From IMG/VR virus record IMGVR_UViG_3300046787_000408, positions 62,001-126,000 of that record: DNA of 64,000 nt. The stretch is one strand, 5' to 3'. The notes beneath the pieces were generated by a model that saw only the letters and a program-made list of their open reading frames with translations, ran no database searches and was not told where the DNA came from. The translations under genes and the position numbers were made by a program. Shown piece by piece: positions 13,966 through 44,734 of the stretch (positions are counted from its first letter, which is position 1; the number at the start of each line of letters is the position of its first letter).

Positions 13966-15858
13966 ATGAGTTTCTTTTACAATCTAAACAACAAACTAAA
14001 CGCTATTCGCGATTTGCCCAGTACTACTCACGGACAACTCAATGAGCGTGACATGAGCCGTGCTGCCAAGGGCTATGAAAAGTATGGCAAAGAAGGCATG
14101 GAAGCTTTGGCCAAGGCTGGACGTGAAGGCAAAGACCTTGACAAGGTTCGCAACAAGTACGACAAGTATGACGAGTCAGTGGAAGAAGGTCTAGGCGACA
14201 TGGCTCGCAAGGTGGGCGGTGCTGTTAAAAAGGTAGCTGGTAAAGCACTAGATACTATTGGACATGGCAATGACGCTGACATGATTCGTGATCTACAAAA
14301 GAAAATGGGCGTGCCACAGACTGGTATGAAGCCAGGTGCAGAACCAAATCCCAAGCAAGTCAAAGAAAAAATGAATCCAGCCAAGGCCAAGAGCTTTGCT
14401 GCACTTGCTGAACCCAAAGACAAAATTACTTTTGCTGACAAGATCGCTGGTGCCAAGAAAGAAGTTGACGAGATGTTAGGTGACGTTGCTGCTGAAGCAA
14501 TGAAGCAAGCACTTGGTGGCGGCAAACAAGTTGTTGCCAGTGAAGACGATGATAACAATCCTTTCACAAACTGGAAGAAGCCACGTGCTGACAAACCCAA
14601 AGTTGGTACAATCACACATGGTCGCAAACACGATGTGGAAGAAATCCCTGGTGGTCGTAGAGTAACTCGCAGAGTTGATCCGAGTGGTATCAGTGTTGGT
14701 GCTGACGACGAAGCTGCACAAAGCGGTGAAAAGCGCGGACGTGGTCGTCCAAAGAAAGCTGGCGGCCCTGCACAAGAGCGAGTAACAGCCAACAGTCGCA
14801 AAGCCGATCGCACAAGATTCCAAAGCAAGAAAAAAGTTGCCGAAGAAGGCGATAACGAAAGCGACGAAATCAAACAAGCAATGGCCATGCTGAAAAAAGC
14901 CGGCTATAAAGTTAGCAAAGCAGCTGACGGTGCTGAACAAGTGGACGAAAAAGCAGTAAGCAAGAAGCAACAAAAGTTCATGGGCATGGTCCATGCAACA
15001 CAAAAGGGCGAAAAAGCTCCTAGCAAAGAAGTTGCTAAAGTTGCCAAGACCATGAAGAAAGGTGATGCAGAAGATTTTGCAAGCACCAAGCACAAAGGTT
15101 TGCCTGAAAAGAAAAAGCCTGAAGGCAAGAAAGAAAAAACTGAAGAAGCAACAGACAGCACTCCATCCAAAGGCGGTATGAAGTTTGGTGGCGGCATCTA
15201 TGACAGCATGAATCGTGAACTTGAAAACATGATCAAAGAAAGCATGGCTCGTCTAGACGAAAGCATGAGCATCAACATGAGCATGAACAATGATGAGCAC
15301 GGCGGCCCTACCAAGAGCCTTACTGTGACTGCTACTGACGATGATGCAATGAAACTGAGTCAGCTGTTGAAAAGCGCAGGCCTGGGCGGCGGCGATGAAG
15401 AAGGTTACGGCGGATCTGGATACAAGAGCGCATGCGGTTGCGGAACACCTGACTGCTCATGTGGTGACGACGAGTTAGACGAAGTGTCCATGAATCAACC
15501 TGACTATCCAACAGAAACAGAAACCAGTAGTGATGCACTGCAATACGCAGGTGGCCTCAACAAGCCTAAAGCAACAGGTCAAACAACCGCTCCAGTTATT
15601 GCTAGCCAAGATGATCGTCAAGAAAGTTATGCTGAAGCTGAAGAAGATGCCCTGCACCGCATGATGGAAATGGCCGGCGTCAAGAAAAAAGAAGTTGACG
15701 AAGAAAAAACTGACGAAGGCAACAAGTTCACTGGCAATCTGGCCAAGGCTCGTGCTGCTGGCAAAAAAGAAGCTGACCTAGACGGTGACGGCGACATGGA
15801 AAAAGTTCAAGAAAGTATTTTTGACTTGACCAATCAATGGAAAGCATACAAAGGATAA
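13966..15858 (+). CDS. Large charged low-complexity protein, probable internal/core protein with AT-hook and DUF3008-like segment
   Basis: K/E/D-rich 630 aa. Contains KRGRGRPKK and AVSKKQQKFMGMV...DFASTKHKGLPEKK, plus many hydrophobic-x-E sites. Confidence 0.65.
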   Translation: MSFFYNLNNKLNAIRDLPSTTHGQLNERDMSRAAKGYEKYGKEGMEALAKAGREGKDLDKVRNKYDKYDESVEEGLGDMARKVGGAVKKVAGKALDTIGHGNDADMIRDLQKKMGVPQTGMKPGAEPNPKQVKEKMNPAKAKSFAALAEPKDKITFADKIAGAKKEVDEMLGDVAAEAMKQALGGGKQVVASEDDDNNPFTNWKKPRADKPKVGTITHGRKHDVEEIPGGRRVTRRVDPSGISVGADDEAAQSGEKRGRGRPKKAGGPAQERVTANSRKADRTRFQSKKKVAEEGDNESDEIKQAMAMLKKAGYKVSKAADGAEQVDEKAVSKKQQKFMGMVHATQKGEKAPSKEVAKVAKTMKKGDAEDFASTKHKGLPEKKKPEGKKEKTEEATDSTPSKGGMKFGGGIYDSMNRELENMIKESMARLDESMSINMSMNNDEHGGPTKSLTVTATDDDAMKLSQLLKSAGLGGGDEEGYGGSGYKSACGCGTPDCSCGDDELDEVSMNQPDYPTETETSSDALQYAGGLNKPKATGQTTAPVIASQDDRQESYAEAEEDALHRMMEMAGVKKKEVDEEKTDEGNKFTGNLAKARAAGKKEADLDGDGDMEKVQESIFDLTNQWKAYKG

Positions 15859-19622: not shown

Positions 19623-20762
19623 ATGAGTAATTTCTTTTGCGCAGCCCCTTGGCGTGGGCTGCATATCAATCCCCGTGGCGATGTCAAAACCTGCTGTGCC
19701 GGCGACCCCAACATGTTGGGCAACCTCAACAGCAACACCATCACAGAGATACTGGATTCAGATCTCTTAAAACAAATACGCAGCGAAATGTCACAAGGAC
19801 GAGCACACAAATACTGCTCCAACTGTGTACAGGCCGAACGCTTTGGTGCAGATTCAGAACGCAAGTGGCACAACGACACCAATCCCAATTTTGACTATGC
19901 CACAGCTGGAGAGCAGTATCACTATCCTGTGATTGTGGATGTGCGTTGGAACACCACTTGCAACCTCAGTTGTAACTATTGCAGTGAATGGGCCAGCTCC
20001 AAATGGTCAGCACTCAAGGGCATTCCGTTCAAGTCAGGCTCAAGGCCCTACTATGAACAAGTGTGTGACTTTCTTGAACAACACAAATCGCACATTCAAG
20101 ACGTTGCACTTGTGGGCGGAGAGCCTTTGCTGCTACCCGAAAACGAACGACTGTTGGATGTTATCCCAGAAGATTGTGCTGTGACCTTGATCACCAACAT
20201 GAATGTGGATCTTGACAAGAACAAGATCTTTAAGAAACTAGCACAACGCAAACGAGTTGGGTGGAGCATGAGCTTTGACAACATTGGCGACAGATTTGAA
20301 TATGTGCGTTATGGCGGCAAGTGGAGCATGCTAACAGAGAACTTGGTCAAAGTCAAAGACTTGTTCAAACAAGGCCAGTGGGGTGGTATTCATGCAGTGT
20401 ACAACATCTACAATGCCACACGTATTGTGGAGTTTCGTGAATGGGCTGCTGAACAAGGTGTGTCAGTGTTGTGGCAGAATCTGTTTCAACCCGATTATCT
20501 GGATCCGTTCTTGCACGGACCAGAAGTTGCTGCCGCTGCCGCAGCTGAAATTGAAAGATTCTATGCTACAGGCCTAGCAACACCAGCAGAGCGTCAATTC
20601 TTTGACAATGCTTTGACCACATACCGTGCAGTTACACAAGAACGATCAGGTATCACCAGCAAGTTTCGAGAACATATTGCCGAGATTGAAACTCAATACC
20701 ACAAAGACCAAGCTGGAAAGTTTGCGCAGTTGTGGCCTGAATTATCACATCTAGTACTATGA
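19623..20762 (+). CDS. Radical SAM protein with N-terminal SPASM/twitch-like domain
   Basis: FCAAPW..L.I.P.G....CC and C..C, then CNLSCNYC and GGEP. Confidence 0.88.
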   Translation: MSNFFCAAPWRGLHINPRGDVKTCCAGDPNMLGNLNSNTITEILDSDLLKQIRSEMSQGRAHKYCSNCVQAERFGADSERKWHNDTNPNFDYATAGEQYHYPVIVDVRWNTTCNLSCNYCSEWASSKWSALKGIPFKSGSRPYYEQVCDFLEQHKSHIQDVALVGGEPLLLPENERLLDVIPEDCAVTLITNMNVDLDKNKIFKKLAQRKRVGWSMSFDNIGDRFEYVRYGGKWSMLTENLVKVKDLFKQGQWGGIHAVYNIYNATRIVEFREWAAEQGVSVLWQNLFQPDYLDPFLHGPEVAAAAAAEIERFYATGLATPAERQFFDNALTTYRAVTQERSGITSKFREHIAEIETQYHKDQAGKFAQLWPELSHLVL

Positions 20763-31371: not shown

Positions 31372-31395
31372 TAGTTTGAGTCAGTAAATAACTGC

Positions 31396-32154
31396 ATGAA
31401 AATTGTTATTGTTACAGGTGGTTTTGACCCCATACATTCTGGTCATCTTGCTTACTTTAAAGCAGCCCGAACACTCGGAGATATGCTAGTTGTAGGTCTC
31501 AATTCAGATGCATGGCTTGCTCGAAAAAAGGGCAGGCCATTCATGCCCATGAATGAAAGATATGCACTGGTTAGTGCGCTGTCTATGGTAGATGAAGTTG
31601 TGATCTACAACGACAACGACAACAGTAGTTGTGATGCTATTCGCAAAGTCAAAGAATCCTACCCTGGCCACGAAATTATTTTTGCCAACGGTGGCGACCG
31701 CACTCGAGACAATATCCCTGAAATGATATTTGATGATGTGGAGTTTGTGTTTGGTGTAGGCGGTGAGGACAAGAAAAACAGCTCAAGCTGGATTCTTGAA
31801 GATTGGAAAAAGCCCAAAACAGATCGTACCTGGGGCTATTATCGTGTGCTACACGAAGTGGGCAATCACGTCAAACTCAAAGAGCTTACTGTAAACCCCA
31901 AAACATGCTTGAGCATGCAACGGCATGAAAATCGTGCGGAGTTTTGGTTTGTGGCTGAAGGTGAAGCTACTGTGTACACTGTGGACCCGCATAGTACAGA
32001 ATATGACTTGCTGTCCAGTCCTGCTCGTCACCAACACACTTGGATTCAGCTCAACCAGTGGCATCAGCTGTGCAACGAAACAGATCAACCACTACGGTTG
32101 ATTGAAATTCAATACGGTGAACAATGTGTTGAGGAAGACATTGAACGCAAATGA
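31396..32154 (+). CDS. Cytidylyl/adenylyltransferase (TagD/RfaE-like) fused to cupin (mannose-6-P isomerase type II C-terminal-like)
   Basis: GGFDPIHSGH, GLNSD.WL..KKG and ANGGDR, then R.WG.Y.V...LS.Q.H..R.E.W...IEIQ.G...EEDI.R. Confidence 0.88.
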   Translation: MKIVIVTGGFDPIHSGHLAYFKAARTLGDMLVVGLNSDAWLARKKGRPFMPMNERYALVSALSMVDEVVIYNDNDNSSCDAIRKVKESYPGHEIIFANGGDRTRDNIPEMIFDDVEFVFGVGGEDKKNSSSWILEDWKKPKTDRTWGYYRVLHEVGNHVKLKELTVNPKTCLSMQRHENRAEFWFVAEGEATVYTVDPHSTEYDLLSSPARHQHTWIQLNQWHQLCNETDQPLRLIEIQYGEQCVEEDIERK

Positions 32155-32828
32155 AGCCAATTCCTGTGTTTGTGGGCTACGACCCTCGTGAAGCTATTGC
32201 TTACCATACCTGCGTTAACAGTATTATTCGTAACAGCTCTCAACCTGTGGCTATTGTGCCAGTTGCACTGAACTTGTTTCGAGACTATTCTGAAACCCAT
32301 ACTGATGGATCTAACCACTTTATCTACACACGCTTCTTGGTTCCTTATCTTTGTGATTTCTCTGGTCATGCTATCTTCATTGATGGCGATATGATTGTAC
32401 GCGGTGACATTGCTGAACTATGGAACATGCGTGATTCAGTCTGTGATGTGCAAGTGGTCAAACATGATTATAAAACTCGCATGCCTGTAAAATACCTAGG
32501 AGCAAAGAATGAAGATTACCCAAGAAAAAATTGGAGTAGTGTTATTTTGTGGAATTGTAATAGTTTCCCTAATAGGAAGCTTACTCCTGATTTCATCCAG
32601 CGATCTACCGGTGCTGAGCTTCACCGTTTTACCTGGCTAGATGACAGACGAATTGGCGAACTCCCTCCTGAATGGAACTGGTTGCCCGATGAATACGGGC
32701 CAAATGCCGACGCCAAGTTACTGCACTACACACTTGGCACGCCATGCTTTCAAGAGTTTGCTGATACGCCGCAAGGCAACGAATGGCACAGAGAACGTAT
32801 TCTAACTGAATACTGTCAACAACGTTAA
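32151..32828 (+). CDS. Glycosyltransferase, GT-A fold (GT8-like)
   Basis: VFVGYDPRE, F...RFL.P, IFIDGD, RKNWSS, WNWL, HYT.G.P. Confidence 0.85.
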   Translation: MKPIPVFVGYDPREAIAYHTCVNSIIRNSSQPVAIVPVALNLFRDYSETHTDGSNHFIYTRFLVPYLCDFSGHAIFIDGDMIVRGDIAELWNMRDSVCDVQVVKHDYKTRMPVKYLGAKNEDYPRKNWSSVILWNCNSFPNRKLTPDFIQRSTGAELHRFTWLDDRRIGELPPEWNWLPDEYGPNADAKLLHYTLGTPCFQEFADTPQGNEWHRERILTEYCQQR

Positions 32829-33466
32829 CGCCAGTGTGCCTTGACCAGTGCATGATCCATCATGGTGCTGGGTTTTTGACTTGTTTTTCTAAACATCAAT
32901 AGCTTGACTTGGTCAAGAGTGTAATTCATATCTCTGCGTGATGCTATGTGAAACCATTCGGTTGGGCAGTGATCAGTTAGCAACGTGTGGGCAGTGTGCT
33001 CACTCACAATAGCTTGGTCTCCGTACAACGGTGGTACACTATACAGTTTTTCCCAGTGCGCAAGTGAACGACTATTGTACAGATCCCACAAGTGACTGTA
33101 ATCATCATTCCAATACATCAAGGCACTTGAGTGTATGTTCTTGTCGGCTTCAACCCACATCACAAACTTTTGGTGTTGTATGCGACTGATCATTTCGTCC
33201 AAGTTGCCACAAATCACAGTGTCAAGATCCAGGAACAGGGTTGGGCCCGATAACACTCCAGGGCGAAACAACTGCATCTTGCTCCAGAAACCATGATCAC
33301 CGGGCAACAACTCAATCCGCTTGCATGGTACATCACAGTCACTAAAGCATATGAATTCGTGAGGTAGTGTTAGATTGCGTTGAACTCCGCGTTGAAGCTT
33401 TTCAACCCAGGAGGCATCATACCCAACTTTGCCGCCTTGGCGCAGCAAACAAACTACGTTAATCAT
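32825..33466 (-). CDS. Glycosyltransferase, GT-A fold
   Basis: WSKMQLF, LFLDLDTVI, SSALM.W, YGDQ. Confidence 0.8.
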   Translation of the reverse strand: MINVVCLLRQGGKVGYDASWVEKLQRGVQRNLTLPHEFICFSDCDVPCKRIELLPGDHGFWSKMQLFRPGVLSGPTLFLDLDTVICGNLDEMISRIQHQKFVMWVEADKNIHSSALMYWNDDYSHLWDLYNSRSLAHWEKLYSVPPLYGDQAIVSEHTAHTLLTDHCPTEWFHIASRRDMNYTLDQVKLLMFRKTSQKPSTMMDHALVKAHWR

Positions 33467-34001
33467 TGTAGCGTTCTAATACCAGTAGTCCAGATGATTT
33501 GTTGCAGTGTTCAACAATGTGCCAATCTCTGTTGTAGTGCAAATACTCTATCACAGCTTCAAACACACCTGGCCAATCACTGGGGTCGTGTAGCACAACA
33601 TATCTCTTGGCCAGGCCAGCATGTTTGTTTAGCTCGGCAATACAATGATCTCGTGTATGCACAGTATCAATAAACAACAAGTCACATTCTTCAGCTTCAA
33701 CTTTTAGGCTGTCACCCACAGTAAACTCAAAGTCAGTTCCGTTTTGATCAGCATTGTGTTTTAATTCGTCAAGCACAGTTAGATACTTGTCAGTGATATC
33801 ATAACTTCGCAAGCGTTTGGGTTGACCAGACAGCCATGCGCAAGTGCTTAGACCGGTGTACACTCCAAACTCTATGATACTATCAACCCTGCTGGCGTAT
33901 TGCTTGTAGGTATCAAACCTTGTGGGACTATCGCCTAACCAGTTGGTTGGGACAATCTTTAAATCAATGTAATCAGCTTTTAGCTCTTGCAGTGTTCTCA
34001 T
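33459..34001 (-). CDS. Class I SAM methyltransferase (Methyltransf_24-like)
   Basis: IIEFGVYTGLST, DLLFIDTVH, VVLHD. Start re-picked at the ATGA overlap. Confidence 0.8.
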   Translation of the reverse strand: MRTLQELKADYIDLKIVPTNWLGDSPTRFDTYKQYASRVDSIIEFGVYTGLSTCAWLSGQPKRLRSYDITDKYLTVLDELKHNADQNGTDFEFTVGDSLKVEAEECDLLFIDTVHTRDHCIAELNKHAGLAKRYVVLHDPSDWPGVFEAVIEYLHYNRDWHIVEHCNKSSGLLVLERYND

Positions 34002-34540
34002 CTTGACATCCAATACACGCCCAGTTTGCTTTTTTGGCTTTTGCGATACGAGTCCTTGATGTAGTGTCCCCAGGTGGCTACAACTTCGTCATGACTCCAG
34101 TCATCCTTGATGTGTGCTTCGTGCGGGTTAGGATACGCATGTTCGTCCTGTGGCATGTGCCTGATAGGGATACTAACAATCAGCATGTCTGCCACTTGCA
34201 AAATACGATCCACAAGAGCAACGGCGTCCTCTTTGGTCATGTGTTCTAGTACATCGCCGGCTATGACCACGTTGGGATTGAACGCTGCCCAGTCCACAGT
34301 GCGAACGTCTTGATTTAGTATCTGATTGTATCTGCGTTCTAATTCAAATTCTTCAATATAAGGTTTCCAAATTTCAACACCAATCCAGTTAGCGTCTACA
34401 CAACATTTGGCATCTTCTCTTATGAGCTTGACATACGTTCCTGATCCTGGACCGATATCTACTACAGTTTTGATAGTTTCTTGATTGGATTGGAACCAAG
34501 CCAGTGTTTCGGCTTTTCCTGATTTTAGACTATACGACAT
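33998..34540 (-). CDS. Class I SAM methyltransferase
   Basis: VVDIGPGSG, GVEIW, GDVLEHM, SIP. Confidence 0.85.
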   Translation of the reverse strand: MSYSLKSGKAETLAWFQSNQETIKTVVDIGPGSGTYVKLIREDAKCCVDANWIGVEIWKPYIEEFELERRYNQILNQDVRTVDWAAFNPNVVIAGDVLEHMTKEDAVALVDRILQVADMLIVSIPIRHMPQDEHAYPNPHEAHIKDDWSHDEVVATWGHYIKDSYRKSQKSKLGVYWMSR

Positions 34541-34566
34541 TGTTTTCCTTGTAAGTTTTGCGCCAC

Positions 34567-34576
34567 TAAATATTTA
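34567..34576. promoter_or_regulatory. Palindromic bidirectional late-type promoter TAAATATTTA
   Basis: TAAATA on both strands, overlapping, between the divergent genes at 34540(-) and 34593(+). Confidence 0.6.
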
Positions 34577-34592
34577 TATACACACATAATAC

Positions 34593-35348
34593 ATGAAAGC
34601 ATTTGTAATTTACCTACCTGAACGCCCGCACAGTGTGGCATCTTCTCGCGACATGATAAAAAGTCTCAAGAGTTACAACATTGATGCTGAACTGTTTGAA
34701 GGCACACCTGGAGATCAAGCAGTGGCCATGGCCAACAAGGCACAAAAAACCTTGTACCCTTACAGCATCAAGAATCGACTGCTGGATGATCATGATATTG
34801 AGCAACTGATACGTCCAGAGCTGTACGAGGAATTCAAAAAGAAACATCGTTACGAAATAATTGAACGTCAGCTTATAGGTGAAAAAGATAAAGGCAAACT
34901 GAGTCGTCCAGGAGTAATTGGTTGTTTTTACAGTCATTACAACTTGTGGAAAAAGTGTATAGACCTTGGCGAGCCTATCATGATTTTTGAAGACGATGTC
35001 AAGTTCTATAGAGGTTACACTCCTGTGGCATTTGACGGTGTACTGATTCTAAGCCTTGGCAAGAGTTCGTTCATGAGTGATCCCCAAAAGACCTACTTGG
35101 AAAACCCCTCAGGTCCTGCTCAAGCTCGCAAGTGGCAGAATTTTAGCATGCCCGGAGCCAGCGGTTATGCTATTACTCCAGATGCTGCTTTGGCTTTGAC
35201 CAAGTTTTATCGTCCCTATTGGTATCCCGCAGACAATGCTATCAATCAGTTTGTGGTGCCTTTGCAGATCAGCACATACTTGATGGGGCGCAACACTTTG
35301 CCAGAAGAAGGCAATATATCAATGACCAAAGCCAAGGATTGGGTATGA
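34593..35348 (+). CDS. Glycosyltransferase family 25
   Basis: AFVIYL...R, G.IGC..SH..LW, IFEDD, G..GYAIT..AA..L, P.D. Confidence 0.88.
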   Translation: MKAFVIYLPERPHSVASSRDMIKSLKSYNIDAELFEGTPGDQAVAMANKAQKTLYPYSIKNRLLDDHDIEQLIRPELYEEFKKKHRYEIIERQLIGEKDKGKLSRPGVIGCFYSHYNLWKKCIDLGEPIMIFEDDVKFYRGYTPVAFDGVLILSLGKSSFMSDPQKTYLENPSGPAQARKWQNFSMPGASGYAITPDAALALTKFYRPYWYPADNAINQFVVPLQISTYLMGRNTLPEEGNISMTKAKDWV

Positions 35349-36256
35349 AAGTAGGAATTTTTTACAACTCAATATCAAACCCTGCCAAGTTCTCAAACAA
35401 GGTCATGCTCATGGACAACTTTGCCGAAGGAGTAAGATCACAAGGTGACGAAGTTATTGAATTTCGAGATAACCGATTGCCTGATCAAAAACTGGATGCT
35501 GGATTCGTACTGGGCTACACACTAGAAGAAAACTTTAGGAAAAAAATTATTGATCAGTTACGCCTGCAAAAAACGCCCAGTGTGTTTGTGGACAGCAACA
35601 TCCTGCACTATGCTAGACCCGAACACGAATGGCATCGTTACAGCATAGGTTCAGTATACCCCAATTCAGGCACGTATTTTTTTGATCAGTTGGACACTAG
35701 CAAGTGGTATAAATTTGCTGGATGGCACAACGTTACACTTCGACCCTGGCGCCAACACGGTAGTCATATCTTGATCTTGTGTCAACGCCCCAAAGGATTC
35801 AACATGTTTACAGACCAAGAAGTTTGGCTGGACAAAACCATTAGCAAAATACGCAAACACAGTAACCGCGACATCATGATTCGCATGCACCCTGGTGACG
35901 GCGCACGGTTCAAACAAATAGAAAAGATACAGAAAAAGTACGGCACCACAGTGACTATTAGTGAACATGCCAATATTCGTGATGCCTTGGTAAACTGCTG
36001 GTGTACTGTGGGTCTTAACTCAACGCCCAATGTTGTGGCAGCTATAGAAGGTGTGCCAGGTTACATTGAAGACACCACACGGTCATGGGCAGCTGACGTG
36101 GCATTTACTGATCTATCCATGATCGAAAACCCACCTTTGCCTGACCGTACAGACTGGTCTCACAAAATTGCCAACATACACTGGAGCAATACTGAAGTAC
36201 GTTCAGGCCTGCTTTGGTCAGCTATCAAAAAGTATATCGGTTCTTCTCTGCGATAA
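35345..36256 (+). CDS. Capsular-polysaccharide modification (KpsS/KpsC-like, GT-B) protein
   Basis: IL.Q, IR.HPGD, TV.LNST..V.A..EG.P. Start re-picked at MKVGIFYN. Confidence 0.6.
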   Translation: MKVGIFYNSISNPAKFSNKVMLMDNFAEGVRSQGDEVIEFRDNRLPDQKLDAGFVLGYTLEENFRKKIIDQLRLQKTPSVFVDSNILHYARPEHEWHRYSIGSVYPNSGTYFFDQLDTSKWYKFAGWHNVTLRPWRQHGSHILILCQRPKGFNMFTDQEVWLDKTISKIRKHSNRDIMIRMHPGDGARFKQIEKIQKKYGTTVTISEHANIRDALVNCWCTVGLNSTPNVVAAIEGVPGYIEDTTRSWAADVAFTDLSMIENPPLPDRTDWSHKIANIHWSNTEVRSGLLWSAIKKYIGSSLR

Positions 36257-37016
36257 ACTTGGGTAGATCTTTACGTGTGCCTTTGGCGGTCCATATCACA
36301 CTGTCTGGTCTCATGTCCCAATCAATCAGACTAATGGGCAAATTGCCACTGGCATATCGTGGCACAATTTGATCTAGAATGTCTTGATCAAGTCCCCAGT
36401 AGATATAATCATTTTCAATACTGGATCTTAGCGCTTGCGAATACTGATTCAAGAACTCACTGCTTCGCCCTTGTGCATTTACATACATTCCGCCAGCTAG
36501 AATGCGAGCTTTGGCGCCAGTGATCTTGTGCAGATAAAAATCATGTTGCTGGCTCAGTCTAGGAATAGTGTTACGTATCACAGCATCCACATCCATGCTC
36601 ATGAATGATGCAGAACCGGCTAGTTCAGCCAGTCTAATAAATCTTGCACAGGCATAGTAGGTTTTTTGCATGCGATGGTGTAGGTCAATATCTTGCCCTT
36701 TTTTCATGGCATTTCGTGTGCGTTCCAGTTGTGCCCTGCGCACTGGGTCAGTGGCCATGTCCCATTGAGCAGCGGCTGTGTCAAATTGATCTGGGGTCAC
36801 ATACTCGTAGGTTACAGTAACACCCACCTGGTCAGCACAATAGTCCAATTGATCTTGACGTGGGTTAAAGATATGCAAGTGTAAAGGATCTGGCGAGTTG
36901 GCTCTTGAGCTGTTGATTAGTTCACGTGCAAACTGGTCAAAGTAGCTTTGATCACATGCTGAATAGATAAAAAAGTCTGCGGTAGGCGCAGCGCCGTGCA
37001 TTTGTGGTAATATCAT
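36225..37016 (-). CDS. Nucleotide-diphospho-sugar transferase-like protein
   Basis: YYACARF, MDVDA (DxD), WGLDQ.IL. Confidence 0.65.
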   Translation of the reverse strand: MILPQMHGAAPTADFFIYSACDQSYFDQFARELINSSRANSPDPLHLHIFNPRQDQLDYCADQVGVTVTYEYVTPDQFDTAAAQWDMATDPVRRAQLERTRNAMKKGQDIDLHHRMQKTYYACARFIRLAELAGSASFMSMDVDAVIRNTIPRLSQQHDFYLHKITGAKARILAGGMYVNAQGRSSEFLNQYSQALRSSIENDYIYWGLDQDILDQIVPRYASGNLPISLIDWDMRPDSVIWTAKGTRKDLPKFIAEKNRYTF

Positions 37017-37047
37017 ATGTGGGTATTTAACGGTGTAAATATCCTGT

Positions 37048-37893
37048 ATGAAAATTGCCTACTTCCCTGCACAAGTTGCACTCAACGGCGCACCTGTGAT
37101 GGAGGCGTTGTTGGACTGTTTGCAAGCCGCTGGACACGAAACACAAGAGAACTCATGGGAGTCAGATGCCGCAGTAATATGGTCAGTATTGTGGCACGGG
37201 CGCATGGCTGCAAATCAAGCAGTGTATGAACACTATCGTGCTCGAAACAAGCCTATTATAGTGGTAGAAGTTGGCTCGCTGTACAGGGGCAACACCTGGA
37301 AGATTGCAGTTAATCACGTGAATGGCACAGGCTATTACGGACATCAAGATAACCTGGATTGGGATCGTCCACGCAAACTAAAGATCAGTTTGGCCACGCA
37401 ACTAGTCACACGTTCTGAGATTGTTATTGCGGCCCAGCATCAACACAGCTTGTTGGCTCAACCTATTGTTCCTGTTGATCAATGGGTACATACTCAAATA
37501 CAACTGATCAGAAACAACAGTGACCGTCCCATTGTGGTGCGATCACATCCTAGGTCACTGTTGAACATACGCAACTTGCCGCCAGGTGTAACACTACAAC
37601 GACCCAATCGTGTAACTGGCACCTACGACAGTTACGACATGCACTATGATTGTCATGCTGTGATCAACTATAATTCTGGTCCTGGCATTCAAGCTGCAAT
37701 AGCAGGCGTGCGTCCTGTAGTGGATTCAAGTAGTCTTGCATATCCAGTAGCAGTAGGGTATGCGGACCTGGAACAACCTTATCTGGTAGACAGAGATCTA
37801 TGGCTCACACAGATCTGCCACACAGAATATACCGTAGAAGAAATCAAACAAGGATTATGGCTAAACAGACTAGCACCAGCACTGAACCTGTAG
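37048..37893 (+). CDS. KpsS/KpsC-like protein, paralogue of 35345
   Basis: IAAQH, VR.HP, INYNSG.GI.A...G..., W.....EI..G. Confidence 0.6.
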   Translation: MKIAYFPAQVALNGAPVMEALLDCLQAAGHETQENSWESDAAVIWSVLWHGRMAANQAVYEHYRARNKPIIVVEVGSLYRGNTWKIAVNHVNGTGYYGHQDNLDWDRPRKLKISLATQLVTRSEIVIAAQHQHSLLAQPIVPVDQWVHTQIQLIRNNSDRPIVVRSHPRSLLNIRNLPPGVTLQRPNRVTGTYDSYDMHYDCHAVINYNSGPGIQAAIAGVRPVVDSSSLAYPVAVGYADLEQPYLVDRDLWLTQICHTEYTVEEIKQGLWLNRLAPALNL

Positions 37894-38594
37894 ACTGTGC
37901 ATGCGTGATACACGGCACTGGCTATGACTGGGTGTATGTAGAACGACTATACAACATGCTACAGCGCAACATACCACAAGGTATTCGCATGCATGTGTAC
38001 ACCGAAGCTGAGAGACCAGTTCCCTCACACATGATCCGGCATGACTTGGTAAGCTGGCCCAATGTGTCTGGTCCTAGACGCAGCTGGTGGTACAAGCTAC
38101 AACTGTTTGACCCCAGGCATCATCAAGGCAATATGCTGTACTTTGATCTTGATACTGTGATTGTTCGAGACCTTACATGGATACTGCGTTTGGATCCTGC
38201 ATACTTGTGGGGCATAAAAGATTTCAAGTACTTGCAGAATCCCAACAAGCTGACTTTGAACAGCAGTATCATGTGGTGGCACGTGCCCAGTTTTGGCGAT
38301 GTGTGGCACAATTTCAGCAGTCAAGACATTGCCACTGTTACACGTAGATATCCCGGAGATCAAGATTACATACAAGCTGCCTTGGGACACAATCGTATTC
38401 GTTATTTTGAAACACAACATGTTCAAAGTTGGCGCTGGCAGTGCTTGGACGGTGGCTACGACTTTGCATATAGAGCACATCGTCGTCCGGGCACAGGCAC
38501 AGTAATCAACAATGACACCAGTGTAGTGGTGTTTCACGGCAACCCCAAACCACACAAAATTACAGAATCTGTAATTGCAGATTTGTGGCATTAG
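37857..38594 (+). CDS. Glycosyltransferase, GT-A fold
   Basis: WWYKLQLF, LYFDLDTVI, NSS.M.W, GDQDY, FHG.PKP. Start re-picked at MAKQTS. Confidence 0.82.
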   Translation: MAKQTSTSTEPVDCACVIHGTGYDWVYVERLYNMLQRNIPQGIRMHVYTEAERPVPSHMIRHDLVSWPNVSGPRRSWWYKLQLFDPRHHQGNMLYFDLDTVIVRDLTWILRLDPAYLWGIKDFKYLQNPNKLTLNSSIMWWHVPSFGDVWHNFSSQDIATVTRRYPGDQDYIQAALGHNRIRYFETQHVQSWRWQCLDGGYDFAYRAHRRPGTGTVINNDTSVVVFHGNPKPHKITESVIADLWH

Positions 38595-38648
38595 GTTGAC
38601 CAATTAATCCCAATTTGCTATAATAACAACATAGCAACAAGGAGCAAC

Positions 38649-38876
38649 ATGTCATATTACATTTTTAATCGTAACAAAGACTATGGTCCACGCAAGGGTT
38701 TAGAGGGTCCGTTTCATTACCCCAACGGAGCGGTGCTGTACTACGATCCCAAAGAAGGCGAGTACTACGATCCTACTACAGATTTTTATGTGCCCCGCGA
38801 CGAAGTTGCAGAGTTGCAGAACACAATTTTCGACGTATTAAAAGTTAATACTTCAGTAGTACAAAAAAACATTTGA
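38649..38876 (+). CDS. Small early protein
   Basis: Own promoter and AGGAG RBS. Contains LYYDPKEG.YYDP.TDFY. Confidence 0.75.
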   Translation: MSYYIFNRNKDYGPRKGLEGPFHYPNGAVLYYDPKEGEYYDPTTDFYVPRDEVAELQNTIFDVLKVNTSVVQKNI

Positions 38877-38926
38877 CCCAAATTGGGCAATTTGTTATAA
38901 TTAACGCTTAACACAAAGGATCTACA

Positions 38927-39100
38927 ATGGCTGGCAAAGCAACTTCTTGTTATCTAACAATTTGTGCCAAAGGCACTCACACCGCAGTGACTCGCAAAGT
39001 GTTTTTCACTGCGGCTGCAATGAATCAGTACCTCAAAAGCGACGAGTGCAAAGAGAAATTTCCTGCAGATCAGTTTGATTTTGTAAAAGAAATCTACTAA
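38927..39100 (+). CDS. Small early protein (57 aa)
   Basis: Hand translation MAGKATSCYLTIC...FDFVKEIY. Own promoter and AAGGA RBS. Confidence 0.7.
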   Translation: MAGKATSCYLTICAKGTHTAVTRKVFFTAAAMNQYLKSDECKEKFPADQFDFVKEIY

Positions 39101-39159
39101 AAGGTTGACCAAAAATGCCCAATTTGCTATAATATACACATAGCAAAGCAAAAAGGATC

Positions 39160-39300
39160 ATGATGCAGTACACATTGATTTCAGGTAATGGTAAAGTATA
39201 CACTTTTTTCCTTCGTGCAGTAGCTGAAACATATCAGCAAGCATATGGCGGTGTTGTAATTACGCCACAAGTGCTTGCGGAACAAACGGTTGACCAATAA
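39160..39300 (+). CDS. Small early protein (46 aa)
   Basis: Hand translation MMQYTLISGNGKVYTFFLRAVAETYQQAYGG...DQ. Own promoter and AAGGA RBS. Confidence 0.7.
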   Translation: MMQYTLISGNGKVYTFFLRAVAETYQQAYGGVVITPQVLAEQTVDQ

Positions 39301-39348
39301 TTGCCATTTTGCTATAATAGTGGCATAGTAAGAAAAAAGGAGCCAGCA

Positions 39349-39507
39349 ATGACACGCATTTTGTTTTATACCAAAGACTCCCGTGAAGTTCTGCGCTATA
39401 CCAGTTTGGACCTTCAAAAAGCCGGTAGCATTTGGATGGAAGCATGGGCACATCCTTCAGACATTGAAACGTTTCGCCTTAATGGCTGGTGGTTTGAAAC
39501 CATTTGA
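39349..39507 (+). CDS. Small early protein (52 aa)
   Basis: MTRILFYTKD...WWFETI. Own promoter and AAGGAG RBS. Confidence 0.65.
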   Translation: MTRILFYTKDSREVLRYTSLDLQKAGSIWMEAWAHPSDIETFRLNGWWFETI

Positions 39508-39563
39508 CCATTAATTCCCAATCTGCTATAATTTAATTTTAACGCACACAAAAGGAGCCAACC

Positions 39564-42401: not shown

Positions 42402-43268
42402 ATGAGCATTCTGTATATCCAACTTGAAGATCTAACACTACAGTTTCGTGTGCTGGCCACTCCTGTAGCAGAGCTATGGCAGGAGCGAATGAGCCAACGT
42501 CATGCTTGGCCTTTGGATCATCCCAAACGTTTTTATGGATTTGACAGTGCCAAAATTGAAGCAGATCGTGCAATTTCTGAGATCAATCGCTGTGTGAGCA
42601 CAATCAACCAGTACCAGCAAATTATTGACCGTGGCGTAACAGATGTGCATGATCAAGACACGTTGAATTATCTGCACAACATATTTGAACGCTATCACGG
42701 TTTGTTGGATCAGCAGAACAATGAATACTGGGTCTCTGCTCCGGAGCAGGTTCGTGTGGCACTAGCAGAACTCAACTTGGCTGTGCATAGATGTGAGACT
42801 GCACAATCAGCACCAAACCCCAGGATGGTCTGCACCTGGTACGGACAACCCAAACAGTACACTTTGCCGCTGACAATGCAACAGCAATATGGCACCACAA
42901 GTCCGCCCTGGGGCAGCGTTTGCTTGAACTACTGCGAAATAGGCAAAACACTAGAAGACCTGGCTCGTGACAACGATCACTATATTGGTGATGATGCGTT
43001 TCGGCCATTTTCTCATTACAGTAGTGACTTTGTAGTGAGATTCTTTGAACACTTGCCACAAACACTTGACAACCTCCGTGCAAATATGCAACAATACTAC
43101 AATACGCACCAAGAGTTTTTTCACAAGCGTGGGTTTGCATCTTTTGATGACACCCGACTACAACCATTGCGGTTCCCAGTAGCACAATTAATAGAGACTA
43201 TGCCAAGAGCTCGATTGTTACAGGAGATAGCAGCCAGACAACAAGTGAGCAGTATACAAATACAATGA
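42402..43268 (+). CDS. Hypothetical protein
   Basis: Start re-picked 6 nt after a TTGACT-17-TATACT promoter. Coupled to uvsW. Confidence 0.65.
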   Translation: MSILYIQLEDLTLQFRVLATPVAELWQERMSQRHAWPLDHPKRFYGFDSAKIEADRAISEINRCVSTINQYQQIIDRGVTDVHDQDTLNYLHNIFERYHGLLDQQNNEYWVSAPEQVRVALAELNLAVHRCETAQSAPNPRMVCTWYGQPKQYTLPLTMQQQYGTTSPPWGSVCLNYCEIGKTLEDLARDNDHYIGDDAFRPFSHYSSDFVVRFFEHLPQTLDNLRANMQQYYNTHQEFFHKRGFASFDDTRLQPLRFPVAQLIETMPRARLLQEIAARQQVSSIQIQ

Positions 43269-44734
43269 AACAAGCAACCATAGTAATCAAAGACGAAGTA
43301 AACATCAAGATAGAGGGCCTGGATCTTGACTGTCGCAAAAAATTAGTAAACACCTTCAAGTACGAAATACCCGGTGCACGATATCAACCTGCTGTGAGAT
43401 TGGGTAGGTGGGATGGTAAAGTGGCATACTTTCAACTGGGCGGATCCAGCTATATCAACCTGTTACCTGAGATACTGCCTATACTGGAACAGTATGACTA
43501 TGATGTTGATCTAGATGATCAGCGTGACTACCAAACTGTTTTTGAGTTCACACAAATACGTGAAGACTCATTCTCTCACAAGGTATGGCCCAAAGGACAT
43601 CCTGTGGCTGGCCAACCAGTAATGTTGCGAGACTATCAAGTCAAGATTGTAAACGACTATTTGAGCAATCCGCAGTGCATACAAGAAGTGGCCACAGGTG
43701 CAGGCAAAACATTAATGACTGCTGCCTTGAGTCTTAGTGTAGAACAATATGGCCGCACTATTGTGATTGTGCCCAACAAGGACCTGGTACGACAAACCGA
43801 AGCTGACTATATAAATCTAGGTCTAGACGTAGGCGTATACTTTGGAGACCGCAAAGAGAAAGGTCGTACTCACACCATTTGCACTTGGCAAAGTCTCAAC
43901 GTGCTATTAAAAAACACACAAGCTGGTACTGGAGACTTTACAATACACGAGTTTATTGAAGACGTGGTATGTGTAATTGTAGACGAAGTACACATGGCCA
44001 AAGCTGATGCACTCAAGACTCTGCTGTCAGGTGTAATGAGTCGTATCCCTATTCGTTGGGGACTCACTGGTACGGTGCCAAAAGAACCATATGAGTTCAA
44101 GAGCTTGTTGGTAAGCTTGGGACCAGTGATTAGTCATCTTAGTGCTAGTGAACTACAAGATCGCGGGGTACTGGCCAACTGTCACGTGAACATTGTGCAG
44201 TTGATAGATCATGTGGAGTACAAAGAATACCAAAGCGAGCTTAAATATTTGCTGGAAGAGTCGGGCAGGCTTGATGCAATGTCTGGGTTGATCAAAACTA
44301 TCAACGAAACAGGCAACACTCTTGTGTTGGTAGATCGAGTGGCTGCTGGTCATGCCTTGGTTGAACGGCTGGGTGACAAAGCAGTATTTGTGAGTGGTGC
44401 TACTAAATCCAAAGACCGACAAAACGAATATGCTGAAGTTGCAGATGCAACAGACAAAATCATTGTGGCCACTTATGGTGTGGCTGCTGTGGGTATCAAC
44501 ATACCTCGTATTTTTAATCTGGTACTTGTGGAGCCTGGCAAAAGCTTTGTTCGAGTCATTCAAAGTATTGGACGCGGCATTCGCAAAGCTGAAGACAAAG
44601 ATCATGTGCAAATCTGGGACATAACTTCCACATGCAAATTTGCCAAGCGTCATTTGACCAAGCGCAAGCAGTTTTACAAAGATGCTAACTATCCTTTCAC
44701 AGCAGAAAAGCTGGACTGGATGAAAATTGCTTGA
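43265..44734 (+). CDS. uvsW: SF2 DNA helicase UvsW
   Basis: ATGAGKT, VIVDEVH, GLTGT, QSIGRGIR. Confidence 0.92.
   Translation: MKQATIVIKDEVNIKIEGLDLDCRKKLVNTFKYEIPGARYQPAVRLGRWDGKVAYFQLGGSSYINLLPEILPILEQYDYDVDLDDQRDYQTVFEFTQIREDSFSHKVWPKGHPVAGQPVMLRDYQVKIVNDYLSNPQCIQEVATGAGKTLMTAALSLSVEQYGRTIVIVPNKDLVRQTEADYINLGLDVGVYFGDRKEKGRTHTICTWQSLNVLLKNTQAGTGDFTIHEFIEDVVCVIVDEVHMAKADALKTLLSGVMSRIPIRWGLTGTVPKEPYEFKSLLVSLGPVISHLSASELQDRGVLANCHVNIVQLIDHVEYKEYQSELKYLLEESGRLDAMSGLIKTINETGNTLVLVDRVAAGHALVERLGDKAVFVSGATKSKDRQNEYAEVADATDKIIVATYGVAAVGINIPRIFNLVLVEPGKSFVRVIQSIGRGIRKAEDKDHVQIWDITSTCKFAKRHLTKRKQFYKDANYPFTAEKLDWMKIA

What the first reader, a model, noticed from the sequence alone, without database searches (positions are those of the whole stretch)
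31385..38594. Ten-gene glycan-building island wired entirely to late-type promoters: candidate virion or host-surface glycosylation system
Seen: a nucleotidyltransferase-cupin fusion, three GT-A (GT8-like) genes, a GT25, another DxD transferase, two KpsS/KpsC-like genes and two SAM methyltransferases. They form five short alternating operons. Each operon head has TAAATA upstream (31385, 34567 on both strands, 37024 minus, 37036 plus), the same motif found before sheath, tube and neck genes, and I saw no TTGAC-17-TATAAT there. Established: T4 DNA glucosyltransferases are expressed before late genes, and capsid glycosylation is documented for some mycobacteriophages and for giant viruses. Inference: co-expression with assembly genes points to a methylated oligosaccharide placed on virion proteins, or to LPS/capsule remodelling, rather than DNA modification.
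Basis: partly seen in the sequence, partly recalled or inferred. Interest (0 to 1): 0.75.

Follow-up and report, generated by a model that had tools for sequence, protein, structure and literature searches.

The report
Late-wired glycan-building island in jumbo phage
An uncultured freshwater T4-like jumbo phage carries a conserved ten-gene sugar-chain factory whose only recognisable promoters are the type that precedes its virion genes, so it probably decorates the virus particle or the host envelope rather than the DNA, though the target is untested.

Summary
Window 31385-38594 has ten soluble enzymes in five alternating transcription units. They are a cytidylyltransferase-like/PMI-cupin fusion, five GT-A-type transferases (GT8, GT25, a GT8-like paralogue pair and a Nucleotid_trans-like one), two paralogous KpsC/WbbB-like transferases and two SAM methyltransferases.

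All five TAAATA copies in the 7.2 kb lie in its three intergenic gaps (107 nt). Position and spacing are kept in close relatives. Genome-wide, TAAATA is depleted but is the hexamer most enriched upstream of genes. It precedes neck, sheath, tube, terminase, portal, baseplate and fibre genes. A gp55-type late sigma is encoded. Consensus sigma70-type promoters (36, all on the + strand) are absent from the island and start one base after it.

'Late' is therefore well supported in silico, but no transcript timing exists. The g9 model (pLDDT 97) matches beta-Kdo transferases, yet the nucleophile Asp is Ser (g9) or Gly (g7).

The target is unresolved: virion proteins about 0.45, host LPS or capsule about 0.25, DNA about 0.07. 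No hydroxymethylase or DpdA was found. Similar cassettes occur in other aquatic phages. I rate it a new variant of a known kind, of moderate to high interest.

The parts
31385..31390 (+). TAAATA late-type -10 box of unit 1 (g1-g2), 5 nt before the ATG, implying a leaderless-type mRNA
   Evidence: The same motif and 5-nt spacing are kept in L003, L006, L008 and L009.
31396..32154 (+). g1: cytidylyltransferase-like nucleotidyltransferase (GGFDPIHSGH motif) fused to a PMI-type cupin. Predicted sugar- or polyol-phosphate activating and isomerising enzyme.
   Evidence: rfaE_dom_II 1e-21, GMP_PMI C-terminus 9e-17, all below equivalog cut-offs; N-terminal half 50% identical to cyanomyophage proteins
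32151..32828 (+). g2: GT8-family GT-A glycosyltransferase (DGD at residue 78)
32825..33466 (-). g3: GT-A glycosyltransferase (phrog_1962), paralogue of g10, DLD motif
33459..34001 (-). g4: SAM methyltransferase (Methyltransf_24, with a faint RMNT_CmcI sugar O-methyltransferase match)
33998..34540 (-). g5: SAM methyltransferase (Methyltransf_11/25)
34567..34576 (.). Palindrome TAAATATTTA holding two back-to-back late boxes: + strand for g6-g7 (ATG 20 nt on, no SD) and - strand for g5-g4-g3 (ATG 30 nt on, AAGGA SD)
   Evidence: conserved in L003 and L006
34593..35348 (+). g6: GT25-family glycosyltransferase
   Evidence: 59.4 bits against a cut-off of 24
35345..36256 (+). g7: KpsC/WbbB-like transferase, paralogue of g9. 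Keeps the Q and HP motifs; Gly at the nucleophile position.
36225..37016 (-). g8: GT-A (Nucleotid_trans/GT8-like) transferase. Its 3' end overlaps g7 by 32 nt.
37024..37041 (.). Divergent late boxes: - strand 37029-37024 (7 nt before the g8 ATG) and + strand 37036-37041 (6 nt before the g9 ATG)
   Evidence: conserved in L003 and L006
37048..37893 (+). g9: KpsC/WbbB-like GT-B-type transferase. Q130, H167 and P168 are invariant; Ser134 sits where KpsC has its nucleophile Asp.
37857..38594 (+). g10: GT-A glycosyltransferase (phrog_1962, weak GT8 match), 245 aa as in relatives
38596..39532 (+). Right border: five tandem sigma70-type early promoters (TTGACC-N17-TGnTATAAT) before small genes
   Evidence: conserved in L003, L006, L008 and L009

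Best explanation
The island is a conserved, wholly cytoplasmic glycan-assembly module of an abundant, uncultured clade of freshwater T4-superfamily jumbo phages.

Predicted pathway. g1 would supply or isomerise an activated sugar or polyol. Five GT-A enzymes (g2, g3, g6, g8, g10) and two KpsC/WbbB-like enzymes (g7, g9) would add residues one at a time. The KpsC-like pair probably uses the host's CMP-Kdo or another CMP-ulosonic acid. g4 and g5 would O-methylate the product, giving a methylated, probably acidic oligosaccharide.

Predicted regulation. Each of the five units is read from a T4-type late promoter. That means a TAAATA -10 box recognised by host RNA polymerase carrying the phage's gp55-like sigma. 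Three units start so close to the box that the mRNA would be leaderless. The enzymes would therefore appear together with virion proteins.

Most likely acceptor. I infer virion proteins (capsid, tail or fibre), glycosylated in the cytoplasm before or during assembly.

Shown: gene families, fold, motif placement and conservation, and the sigma gene. Inferred: promoter activity and timing, donor sugars, and the acceptor.
For: Families.

g9 fold: AF2 pLDDT 97.2. The top 21 PDB matches are all KpsC or WbbB beta-Kdo transferases, with KrkA further down. The profile hits KpsC 6MGD across the Q and HP motifs, and 5 of 80 family members hit Pfam Capsule_synth.

Donor hint: a distant family member sits next to a KdsB-type CTP_transf_3 gene and a SIS isomerase in another jumbo-phage contig.

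Soluble enzymes: there are no transmembrane segments in any of the ten proteins, and no flippase, polymerase or priming enzyme.

Late wiring:
- All five TAAATA copies are intergenic.
- They are conserved in L003 and L006, while the flanking bases differ in the printed sequence.
- Genome-wide enrichment is strong.
- The motif precedes neck, sheath, tube, TerL, portal, baseplate wedge, fibre and virion proteins.
- The gp55-like sigma matches phrog_12791 at 4.8e-74.
- Early promoters are 36:0 on the + strand, none inside the island. This matches the T4 rule that early and middle transcripts have one polarity and late transcripts either (PMC2988020).

Conservation: the island is syntenic between uvsY and the early cluster in relatives, and its gene content varies between subclades.

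Parallel cassette: Caulobacter phage CcrColossus has genes annotated as sialyltransferase, nucleotide-sugar transferase, methyltransferase and GT9 around a g7 homologue. The cassette lies between a tail protein gene and the lysis genes.

Precedent: mycobacteriophage capsid and tail-tube glycosylation (Freeman 2023, as cited in PMC12619734).
Against: - No transcript timing or 5' ends. Only short contigs of relatives appear in two metatranscriptomes, and these may be DNA carry-over.
- No glycoprotein evidence and no identified acceptor motif.
- The family set (GT8, GT25, RfaE-II-like, Kdo-transferase-like) is the classic LPS-core toolkit, which fits the host-envelope rival.
- g1-g2 could also be read through from the upstream gp32-uvsY block.
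- T4 gp45 found no clamp homologue, so the T4 activation mechanism is not confirmed.
- g7 and g9 lack the Asp nucleophile of KpsC and WbbB, so their donor and chemistry are uncertain.
- The more distant relatives L008 and L009 lack a recognisable box before g9.
Confidence: 0.45

Rival explanations
1. Host-envelope remodelling. The enzymes would act at the cytoplasmic face of the inner membrane on lipid A-core, or on a KpsS/KpsC-type lipid-linked primer. Host MsbA/Lpt or capsule exporters would carry the altered, methyl- or Kdo-capped glycan to the surface. There it would mask the receptor, blocking superinfection or keeping progeny from sticking to debris.
For: GT8, GT25, RfaE-domain-II-like and Kdo-transferase-like families are all LPS-core or capsule-linker families. 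LPS-core enzymes are also soluble or peripheral proteins, matching. The N-terminal half of g1 is closest to genes in cyanomyophages annotated as heptose or LPS enzymes. Such clusters have long been proposed to alter the host surface (my own knowledge). Island content varies between subclades, as surface-glycan loci do.
Against: Late-only wiring leaves little time for new LPS to replace old. Superinfection-exclusion genes are usually early (inference). The phage encodes no export, flippase, ligase or lipid-priming function. The CcrColossus cassette sits in the tail-to-lysis late block.
Confidence: 0.25
2. DNA hypermodification. The transferases would build a sugar chain on a modified base in phage DNA just before packaging, protecting it from restriction.
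For: T4-family phages glycosylate hmC. RfaE-like nucleotidyltransferases have been linked to arabinosyl-hmC phages (my recollection, not checked here). Late DNA modification has a precedent in Mu Mom. The relative PA5oct appears to have modified G (bioRxiv 10.1101/2025.03.31.646159). Radical-SAM genes lie nearby.
Against: No ThyA-family hydroxymethylase and no TGT/DpdA in the 300-kb record. A Tet_JBP search found nothing, but its control did not ring, so that result is uninformative. Seven transferases plus two methyltransferases would be unusually many for a DNA glycan (inference). The island is absent from PA5oct. The record is about 81% complete, so absence is not proof.
Confidence: 0.07
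3. Another acceptor. The module would glycosylate a non-virion phage protein or a host protein. Alternatively it would make a free or lipid-bound methylated oligosaccharide, for example a decoy, an osmolyte or a defence-interfering molecule.
For: Nothing in the sequence fixes the acceptor. All the enzymes are soluble. GT-A, Capsule_synth and FkbM-methyltransferase domains occur fused in other viral and bacterial proteins of unknown role.
Against: There is no positive evidence. Conservation next to the recombination and early modules, and late co-expression, give no specific pointer.
Confidence: 0.13

Closest known systems
T4-type late promoters (gp55 sigma; TATAAATA at -13 to -6)
   Same: An AT-rich -10-only box with no -35. 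It is used on both strands, lies before virion genes, and a gp55 homologue is present. The core TAAATA equals T4 positions -11 to -6. Aeromonas phage Aeh1 likewise varies at -13/-12 (PMC2988020).
   Different: The two 5' bases are not conserved here. A TAAGTA variant exists. About 45% of gene-proximal boxes lie 2-8 nt from the ATG, implying leaderless mRNAs. No gp45 homologue was detected with T4 gp45, and gp33 was not searched for.
Retaining beta-Kdo glycosyltransferases KpsC, KpsS and WbbB (GT107/GT99, Pfam Capsule_synth)
   Same: They are the best structural matches. The Q and HP motifs align and are invariant. A family member neighbours KdsB-type and SIS genes.
   Different: g7 and g9 are short single-domain proteins of 281-303 aa, with TM-scores of only 0.4-0.56. 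The Asp nucleophile position is Ser in 66 of 80 family members (g9) and Gly in the g7 branch. Neither protein reaches the Pfam model itself.
Glycan or 'LPS' gene clusters of T4-like cyanomyophages (S-SSM7, P-TIM68 and others)
   Same: A T4-superfamily myophage of aquatic bacteria carrying nucleotidyltransferase, cupin/PMI and transferase genes. The N-terminal half of g1 is 50% identical.
   Different: There the nucleotidyltransferase and cupin matches lie at separate places in the records. KpsC-like genes, this island's order and its late-box wiring have not been described for them, and their function is equally untested (my own knowledge).
Mycobacteriophage virion glycosylation (Che8, Corndog, Myrna; Freeman et al. 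2023)
   Same: Phage-encoded transferases (plus methyltransferases in some, by my recollection) expressed with structural genes. The glycan is placed on capsid and tail-tube proteins.
   Different: Actinobacterial siphophages and myophages, unrelated enzymes, and experimentally proven. Here there are seven transferases and no proof.
Caulobacter phage CcrColossus gp126-gp131 and the Pelagibacter phage Mosig cassette
   Same: g7 homologues sit inside cassettes holding sialyltransferase-like or GT-A transferases and methyltransferases. In CcrColossus the cassette lies between tail and lysis genes.
   Different: Different phage families, only 23-28% identity, a different gene set (GT9, sulfotransferase), and no function assigned.

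Membership tests
T4-type (gp55-dependent) late promoter | Conserved AT-rich -10 box related to TATAAATA, with no -35 element | tested here: met
   TAAATA is exact at all five unit heads. There is no conserved sequence upstream of it. It equals T4 positions -11 to -6.
T4-type (gp55-dependent) late promoter | Phage encodes a gp55-family sigma | tested here: met
   L002:1003-1902 matches phrog_12791 'sigma factor for late transcription' at 4.8e-74. T4 gp55 matches it at 5.6e-7.
T4-type (gp55-dependent) late promoter | Sliding clamp (gp45) and gp33 co-activator | tested here: inconclusive
   The T4 gp45 protein found no match, and the search had no positive control. gp33 was not searched for.
T4-type (gp55-dependent) late promoter | Precedes virion and assembly genes, on either strand | tested here: met
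   Precedes neck, sheath, tube, TerL, portal, baseplate wedge, tail fibre and virion proteins. There are 83 copies on the + strand and 34 on the - strand.
T4-type (gp55-dependent) late promoter | Transcripts start about 6 nt downstream, late in infection and dependent on replication | not testable with these tools
   No RNA run holds this phage. Contigs of relatives give neither 5' ends nor timing.
Retaining beta-Kdo glycosyltransferase (GT99/GT107, KpsC/KpsS/WbbB) | GT-B-like two-domain fold of KpsC/WbbB | tested here: met
   For the g9 model (pLDDT 97.2), ranks 1-21 of the PDB search are KpsC or WbbB, with E down to 5.8e-8 and TM 0.40-0.56.
Retaining beta-Kdo glycosyltransferase (GT99/GT107, KpsC/KpsS/WbbB) | HP motif (CMP binding) | tested here: met
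   H167 is in 80 of 80 and P168 in 79 of 80 family members. The motif aligns to the HP of KpsC. g7 has RMHPGDG.
Retaining beta-Kdo glycosyltransferase (GT99/GT107, KpsC/KpsS/WbbB) | Q-x-x-x-D motif with the Asp nucleophile (KpsC D160, WbbB D232) | tested here: not met
   Q130 is invariant. The residue aligned to the KpsC Asp is Ser in 66 of 80, Asp in 8 of 80 and Gly in 3 of 80 members, the last being the g7 branch. This rests on a sequence alignment only; no residue-level structural superposition was available.
Retaining beta-Kdo glycosyltransferase (GT99/GT107, KpsC/KpsS/WbbB) | Uses CMP-beta-Kdo as donor | not testable with these tools
   There is only context. A KdsB-like and a SIS gene lie beside a distant member. 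This phage has no KdsA, KdsB or NeuB of its own.
GT8 (Pfam PF01501) | Score above the Pfam gathering cut-off, and a DxD motif | tested here: met
   g2 scores 29.3 bits against 24.3 and has DGD at residue 78. g10 reaches only E 0.044 and g3 has no hit, so g3 and g10 are GT8-like by paralogy and Atlas neighbours only.
GT25 (Pfam PF01755) | Score above the Pfam gathering cut-off | tested here: met
   g6 scores 59.4 bits against 24. The match covers only part of the profile.
HldE/RfaE domain II ADP-heptose synthase, or TagD glycerol-3-P cytidylyltransferase | Reaches the NCBIfam equivalog cut-off | tested here: not met
   rfaE_dom_II scores 77 bits against 181.5, and g3p_cytidyltrns 42 against 165. 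Only the generic cyt_tran_rel domain passes. The fold family is certain; the substrate is unknown.
T4-type DNA glucosylation system | dCMP hydroxymethylase (ThyA family) supplying hmC | tested here: not met
   PF00303 finds nothing in the 300-kb record, while the control rings in 10 genomes. The record is about 81% complete.
Phage virion-glycosylation system (mycobacteriophage type) | Glycan demonstrated on capsid or tail proteins | not testable with these tools
   Needs virions or heterologous expression.

The most novel reading that the evidence does not exclude
An abundant clade of freshwater T4-like jumbo phages glycosylates its own virion proteins with a methylated glycan containing Kdo or another ulosonic acid. 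It would be built by a late-transcribed, largely leaderless seven-transferase module. That module includes a large uncharacterised branch of KpsC/WbbB-like enzymes that lacks the Asp nucleophile. This would be the first virion-glycosylation system I know of in phages of Gram-negative-type hosts. It would also be the prototype for similar cassettes in Caulobacter, Pelagibacter and other aquatic phages.
Probability: 0.3. Interest if true: 0.8.

Novelty: new variant of a known kind. Interest (0 to 1): 0.6.

Why it matters
Virion glycosylation is proven only for a few mycobacteriophages and for giant eukaryotic viruses. Glycan clusters in aquatic T4-like phages have stayed 'LPS-like genes of unknown role' for two decades.

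This case has an unusually clean regulatory signature, conserved across a clade seen in thousands of metagenome variants. That turns the question 'virion, host surface or DNA?' into a testable one.

It also exposes a large family of KpsC/WbbB-like transferases with an altered catalytic motif: 1325 clusters at 50% identity, with none of the 80 members sampled reaching more than a weak Pfam match. That is of interest for glycoenzymology.

Finally, it suggests that leaderless late mRNAs are a major expression mode in this phage group.

Tried and rejected
- Megablast of the island against 50,697 phage records found nothing.
- The nearest cultured relative, PA5oct (TerL 54%), lacks the island. Its published RNA-seq classes cannot be transferred. 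Its paper reports only TATAATA and TTGAC promoters.
- The first AF2 model of g7, from 22 near-identical sequences, had pLDDT 56.6 and was discarded.
- Shallow profiles A1 and A2 found nothing meaningful in PDB sequences. Only the deep profile A3 reached KpsC.
- RNA evidence was thin. No RNA run holds this phage. Laying four runs at 80% likeness gave short contigs of relatives over g4-g9 in two true metatranscriptomes. There were no 5'-end pile-ups and no timing, and DNA carry-over is possible.
- T4 gp45 against the genome gave no hit.
- Tet_JBP search: nothing, but its control rang nowhere, so it is uninformative.
- No KdsB/NeuA, NeuB or KdsA families were found, so the phage has no ulosonic-acid pathway of its own.
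- The 'moraphage' paper (PMC12619734) describes a different, Bacteroidota-linked lineage, so I did not use it for identity.
- I considered TAAATA-N5-ATG as a translational coupling or ribosome signal rather than a promoter. I rejected that as a general explanation for three reasons. The motif occurs in divergent intergenic regions with no upstream gene on that strand. It also occurs 13-43 nt upstream with an SD in between. And its spacing is bimodal, with none at 9-12 nt.
- Complex prediction was not used, because no specific enzyme-acceptor pair could be justified.

Full report
CONTEXT. The window is bases 62001-126000 of a 299,983-bp IMG/VR virus record. The record is linear, about 81% complete by CheckV, and has 45% GC. 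It is a T4-superfamily myophage. The window encodes a neck adaptor, a 1092-aa sheath, tube proteins, TerL, a gp32-like SSB, UvsX, UvsY and a UvsW-like helicase. TerL is 54% identical to that of Pseudomonas jumbo phage PA5oct. The next closest are Atu_ph07 and the RaK2/GAP32 group. DNA runs holding the sequence are freshwater and lake metagenomes. Two island proteins have 848 and 2974 metagenomic homologues, many on contigs of 200-360 kb. The phage therefore represents an abundant uncultured freshwater clade.

THE GENES. Ten ORFs tile 31396-38594.
- g1 is a fusion of a cytidylyltransferase-like nucleotidyltransferase and a PMI-type cupin. It carries the GGFDPIHSGH signature. Only the generic NCBIfam domain model passes its cut-off, so the substrate is unknown.
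- g2 is GT8 above the Pfam threshold, and g6 is GT25.
- g3 and g10 both hit phrog_1962 'glycosyltransferase'. They are paralogues (24% identity, E 2e-10) sharing an LxxDLDTVI DxD motif. Their Atlas neighbours are viral GT8, GT34 and Nucleotid_trans clusters.
- g8 is below threshold for Nucleotid_trans. Its Atlas structure matches GT8 and Nucleotid_trans clusters at TM 0.68-0.78. It also matches larger proteins that carry Capsule_synth or FkbM-methyltransferase domains.
- g4 and g5 are class-I SAM methyltransferases just above threshold.
- g7 and g9 have no Pfam, PHROG or NCBIfam hit, but they are paralogues (hhalign 97.5%).

The total is seven transferases, two methyltransferases and one sugar-activating or isomerising enzyme. 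None has a transmembrane segment.

THE KpsC-LIKE PAIR. A profile search of 1.8 billion representatives found 1325 clusters related to g9. With 80 diverse members the AF2 model reached pLDDT 97.2. Its 21 best PDB matches are all retaining beta-Kdo transferases, KpsC and WbbB, and KrkA appears further down. The profile also hits KpsC 6MGD by sequence (E 0.004) and WbbB (E 0.04). Five of the 80 members hit Pfam Capsule_synth.

However, the membership test is mixed. Q130 and H167-P168 are invariant. The residue aligned with the KpsC nucleophile Asp is Ser in 66 of 80 members, Asp in only 8, and Gly in the g7 branch. I therefore describe these proteins as KpsC/WbbB-like enzymes that probably use a CMP-ulosonic acid. 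I do not file them as members of GT99 or GT107.

A distant member lies beside a KdsB-type synthetase and a SIS isomerase in another jumbo-phage contig. This phage has no KdsA, KdsB or NeuB of its own. Any CMP-Kdo would have to come from the host.

THE PROMOTER OBSERVATION. TAAATA lies at every unit head:
- 31385(+), 5 nt before the g1 ATG.
- The palindrome TAAATATTTA at 34567-34576, serving g6 (+) and g5 (-).
- 37029-37024(-), 7 nt before g8.
- 37036(+), 6 nt before g9.

These are the only five copies in the island, and all lie in its 107 intergenic bases. Under random placement that has a probability of about 7e-10.

Genome-wide the motif is depleted, with 117 copies against about 255 expected. 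Yet 52% of copies lie within 40 nt upstream of a long ORF's first ATG, against 4-18% for hexamers of the same composition. It is the most enriched upstream hexamer, 71 genes against 5.3 expected. It precedes neck, sheath, tube, TerL, portal, baseplate wedge, tail fibre and several virion proteins.

The genome encodes a gp55-family late sigma. TAAATA equals positions -11 to -6 of the T4 late box. Aeromonas phage Aeh1 also varies at -13/-12. In close relatives (L003, L006) all five boxes are kept at the same distance from the start codons, while the flanking bases differ in the printed sequence. In more distant relatives (L008, L009) the g1 box is kept. The g8-side box is TAAATA or the variant TAAGTA, and no box is seen before g9.

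EARLY PROMOTERS. Thirty-six TTGAC-N17-19-TATAAT sites occur, all on the + strand. None is inside the island. Five with extended -10 boxes begin at 38596, one base after g10, and are conserved in relatives. As in T4, one polarity is early and late transcription uses both polarities. The minus-strand units g5-g4-g3 and g8 thus have no recognisable alternative to the late box.

Caveats remain. No terminator separates uvsY from g1, so g1-g2 may also be read through from upstream. No transcript data exist for timing.

WHAT IT DOES. The parts spell out stepwise cytoplasmic assembly of a methylated oligosaccharide of up to about seven residues, probably including an ulosonic acid. Three acceptors are conceivable.

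1. Virion proteins. This fits late co-expression and the lack of any export function. It also fits the diversification of island content between subclades. A parallel cassette lies in CcrColossus between a tail protein gene and the lysis genes. The mycobacteriophage precedent also applies. One possible acceptor is a late tail-fibre-like protein with 18 collagen-like GXY triplets rich in GPT and GPQ. This is speculation, resting on my recollection of glycosylated GPT repeats in Bacillus BclA.

2. Host LPS or capsule. The families involved are the classic LPS-core toolkit, and core enzymes are also soluble. However, late-only expression gives little time for the surface to turn over.

3. DNA. 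This is disfavoured by the absence of ThyA-type hydroxymethylase and TGT/DpdA and by the complexity of the module. The record is incomplete, though, and late DNA modification does exist (Mu Mom).

I put these at about 0.45, 0.25 and 0.07, with about 0.13 for other acceptors.

NOVELTY. Phage glycan clusters and T4-type late promoters are both known. Three things appear new here:
- A conserved seven-transferase module wired to late boxes in a T4-superfamily jumbo phage.
- A large KpsC/WbbB-like family without the Asp nucleophile.
- Recurrence of 'KpsC-like plus GT-A plus methyltransferase' cassettes in unrelated aquatic phages.

I rate it a new variant of a known kind, with interest 0.6.

Noticed in passing
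whole genome; in the window e.g. 12830, 19613, 23077, 25075, 31385, 37036, 26182(-), 1536(-): Spacing from TAAATA to the start codon is bimodal. Of 75 gene-proximal boxes, 34 have the ATG 2-8 nt downstream (mode 5 nt, 14 cases). None lies at 9-12 nt, and the rest lie at 13-43 nt, several with an SD visible in between. If the T4 geometry holds (start about 6 nt after the box), nearly half of the late first cistrons would be leaderless mRNAs.
   Followed up: partly
window 38596-39532, and 36 sites genome-wide: Consensus early promoters TTGAC(C/A)-N17-TGnTATAAT are all on the + strand (36:0). They come in tandem before small ORFs. The five just after the island are conserved in four relatives.
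   Followed up: partly
window 44242 (inside the UvsW-like helicase gene 43265-44734): An internal TAAATA lies 31 nt upstream of an in-frame ATG (44279) that would give a 151-aa C-terminal product. The motif and spacing are kept in L006 and L008. It may be an internal late promoter making a short helicase isoform.
   Followed up: no
genome-wide; L009 about 9990-10000: TAAGTA is the second most enriched upstream hexamer (19 against 2.6 expected). It replaces TAAATA before the g8-like gene in relative L009, so it is probably a variant late box.
   Followed up: partly
G000:C1:18472-18510 (upstream of the gp55-like gene, L002:1003-1902): The late-sigma gene is preceded by a sigma70-type TTGACA-N17-TACAAT site. 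This fits early or middle expression of the late sigma.
   Followed up: no
G000:C1:195790-195951 (- strand), within ORF 195403-197367: A tail-fibre-like protein, preceded by TAAATA, has 18 consecutive collagen-like GXY triplets rich in GPT and GPQ. It is a candidate O-glycosylation substrate, untested.
   Followed up: no
window 32825-32828 and 36225-36256: Convergent units overlap tail to tail (g2/g3 by 4 nt, g7/g8 by 32 nt) with no terminator between them. Late transcription from both sides would collide or give antisense RNA.
   Followed up: no
window 19623-20762; L003 2533-5557: A radical-SAM gene in the window is preceded by TAAATA-N4-ATG. Some relatives have one or two radical-SAM genes inserted between uvsX and uvsY. 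Their role is unknown, and the relative PA5oct is suspected of guanine modification.
   Followed up: no
window 13966-15858: This ORF encodes a 630-aa protein that is highly charged (rich in Lys, Glu, Asp), looks low in complexity and is probably disordered. It lies in the tail/neck module on a strongly purine-skewed stretch, with AT skew 0.32. Only a short central segment matches PHROGs of unknown function.
   Followed up: no
L023 (GenBank assembly GCA_001757005.1, contig MDTB01164434.1) and L024/L025: Distant g9-family members lie in other viral-looking glycan islands. These hold GT29 sialyltransferase-like, GT10, GT8, 2OG-oxygenase, FkbM methyltransferase, GDP-mannose dehydratase and KdsB/SIS genes, one of them next to a TubZ-like tubulin.
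   Followed up: partly
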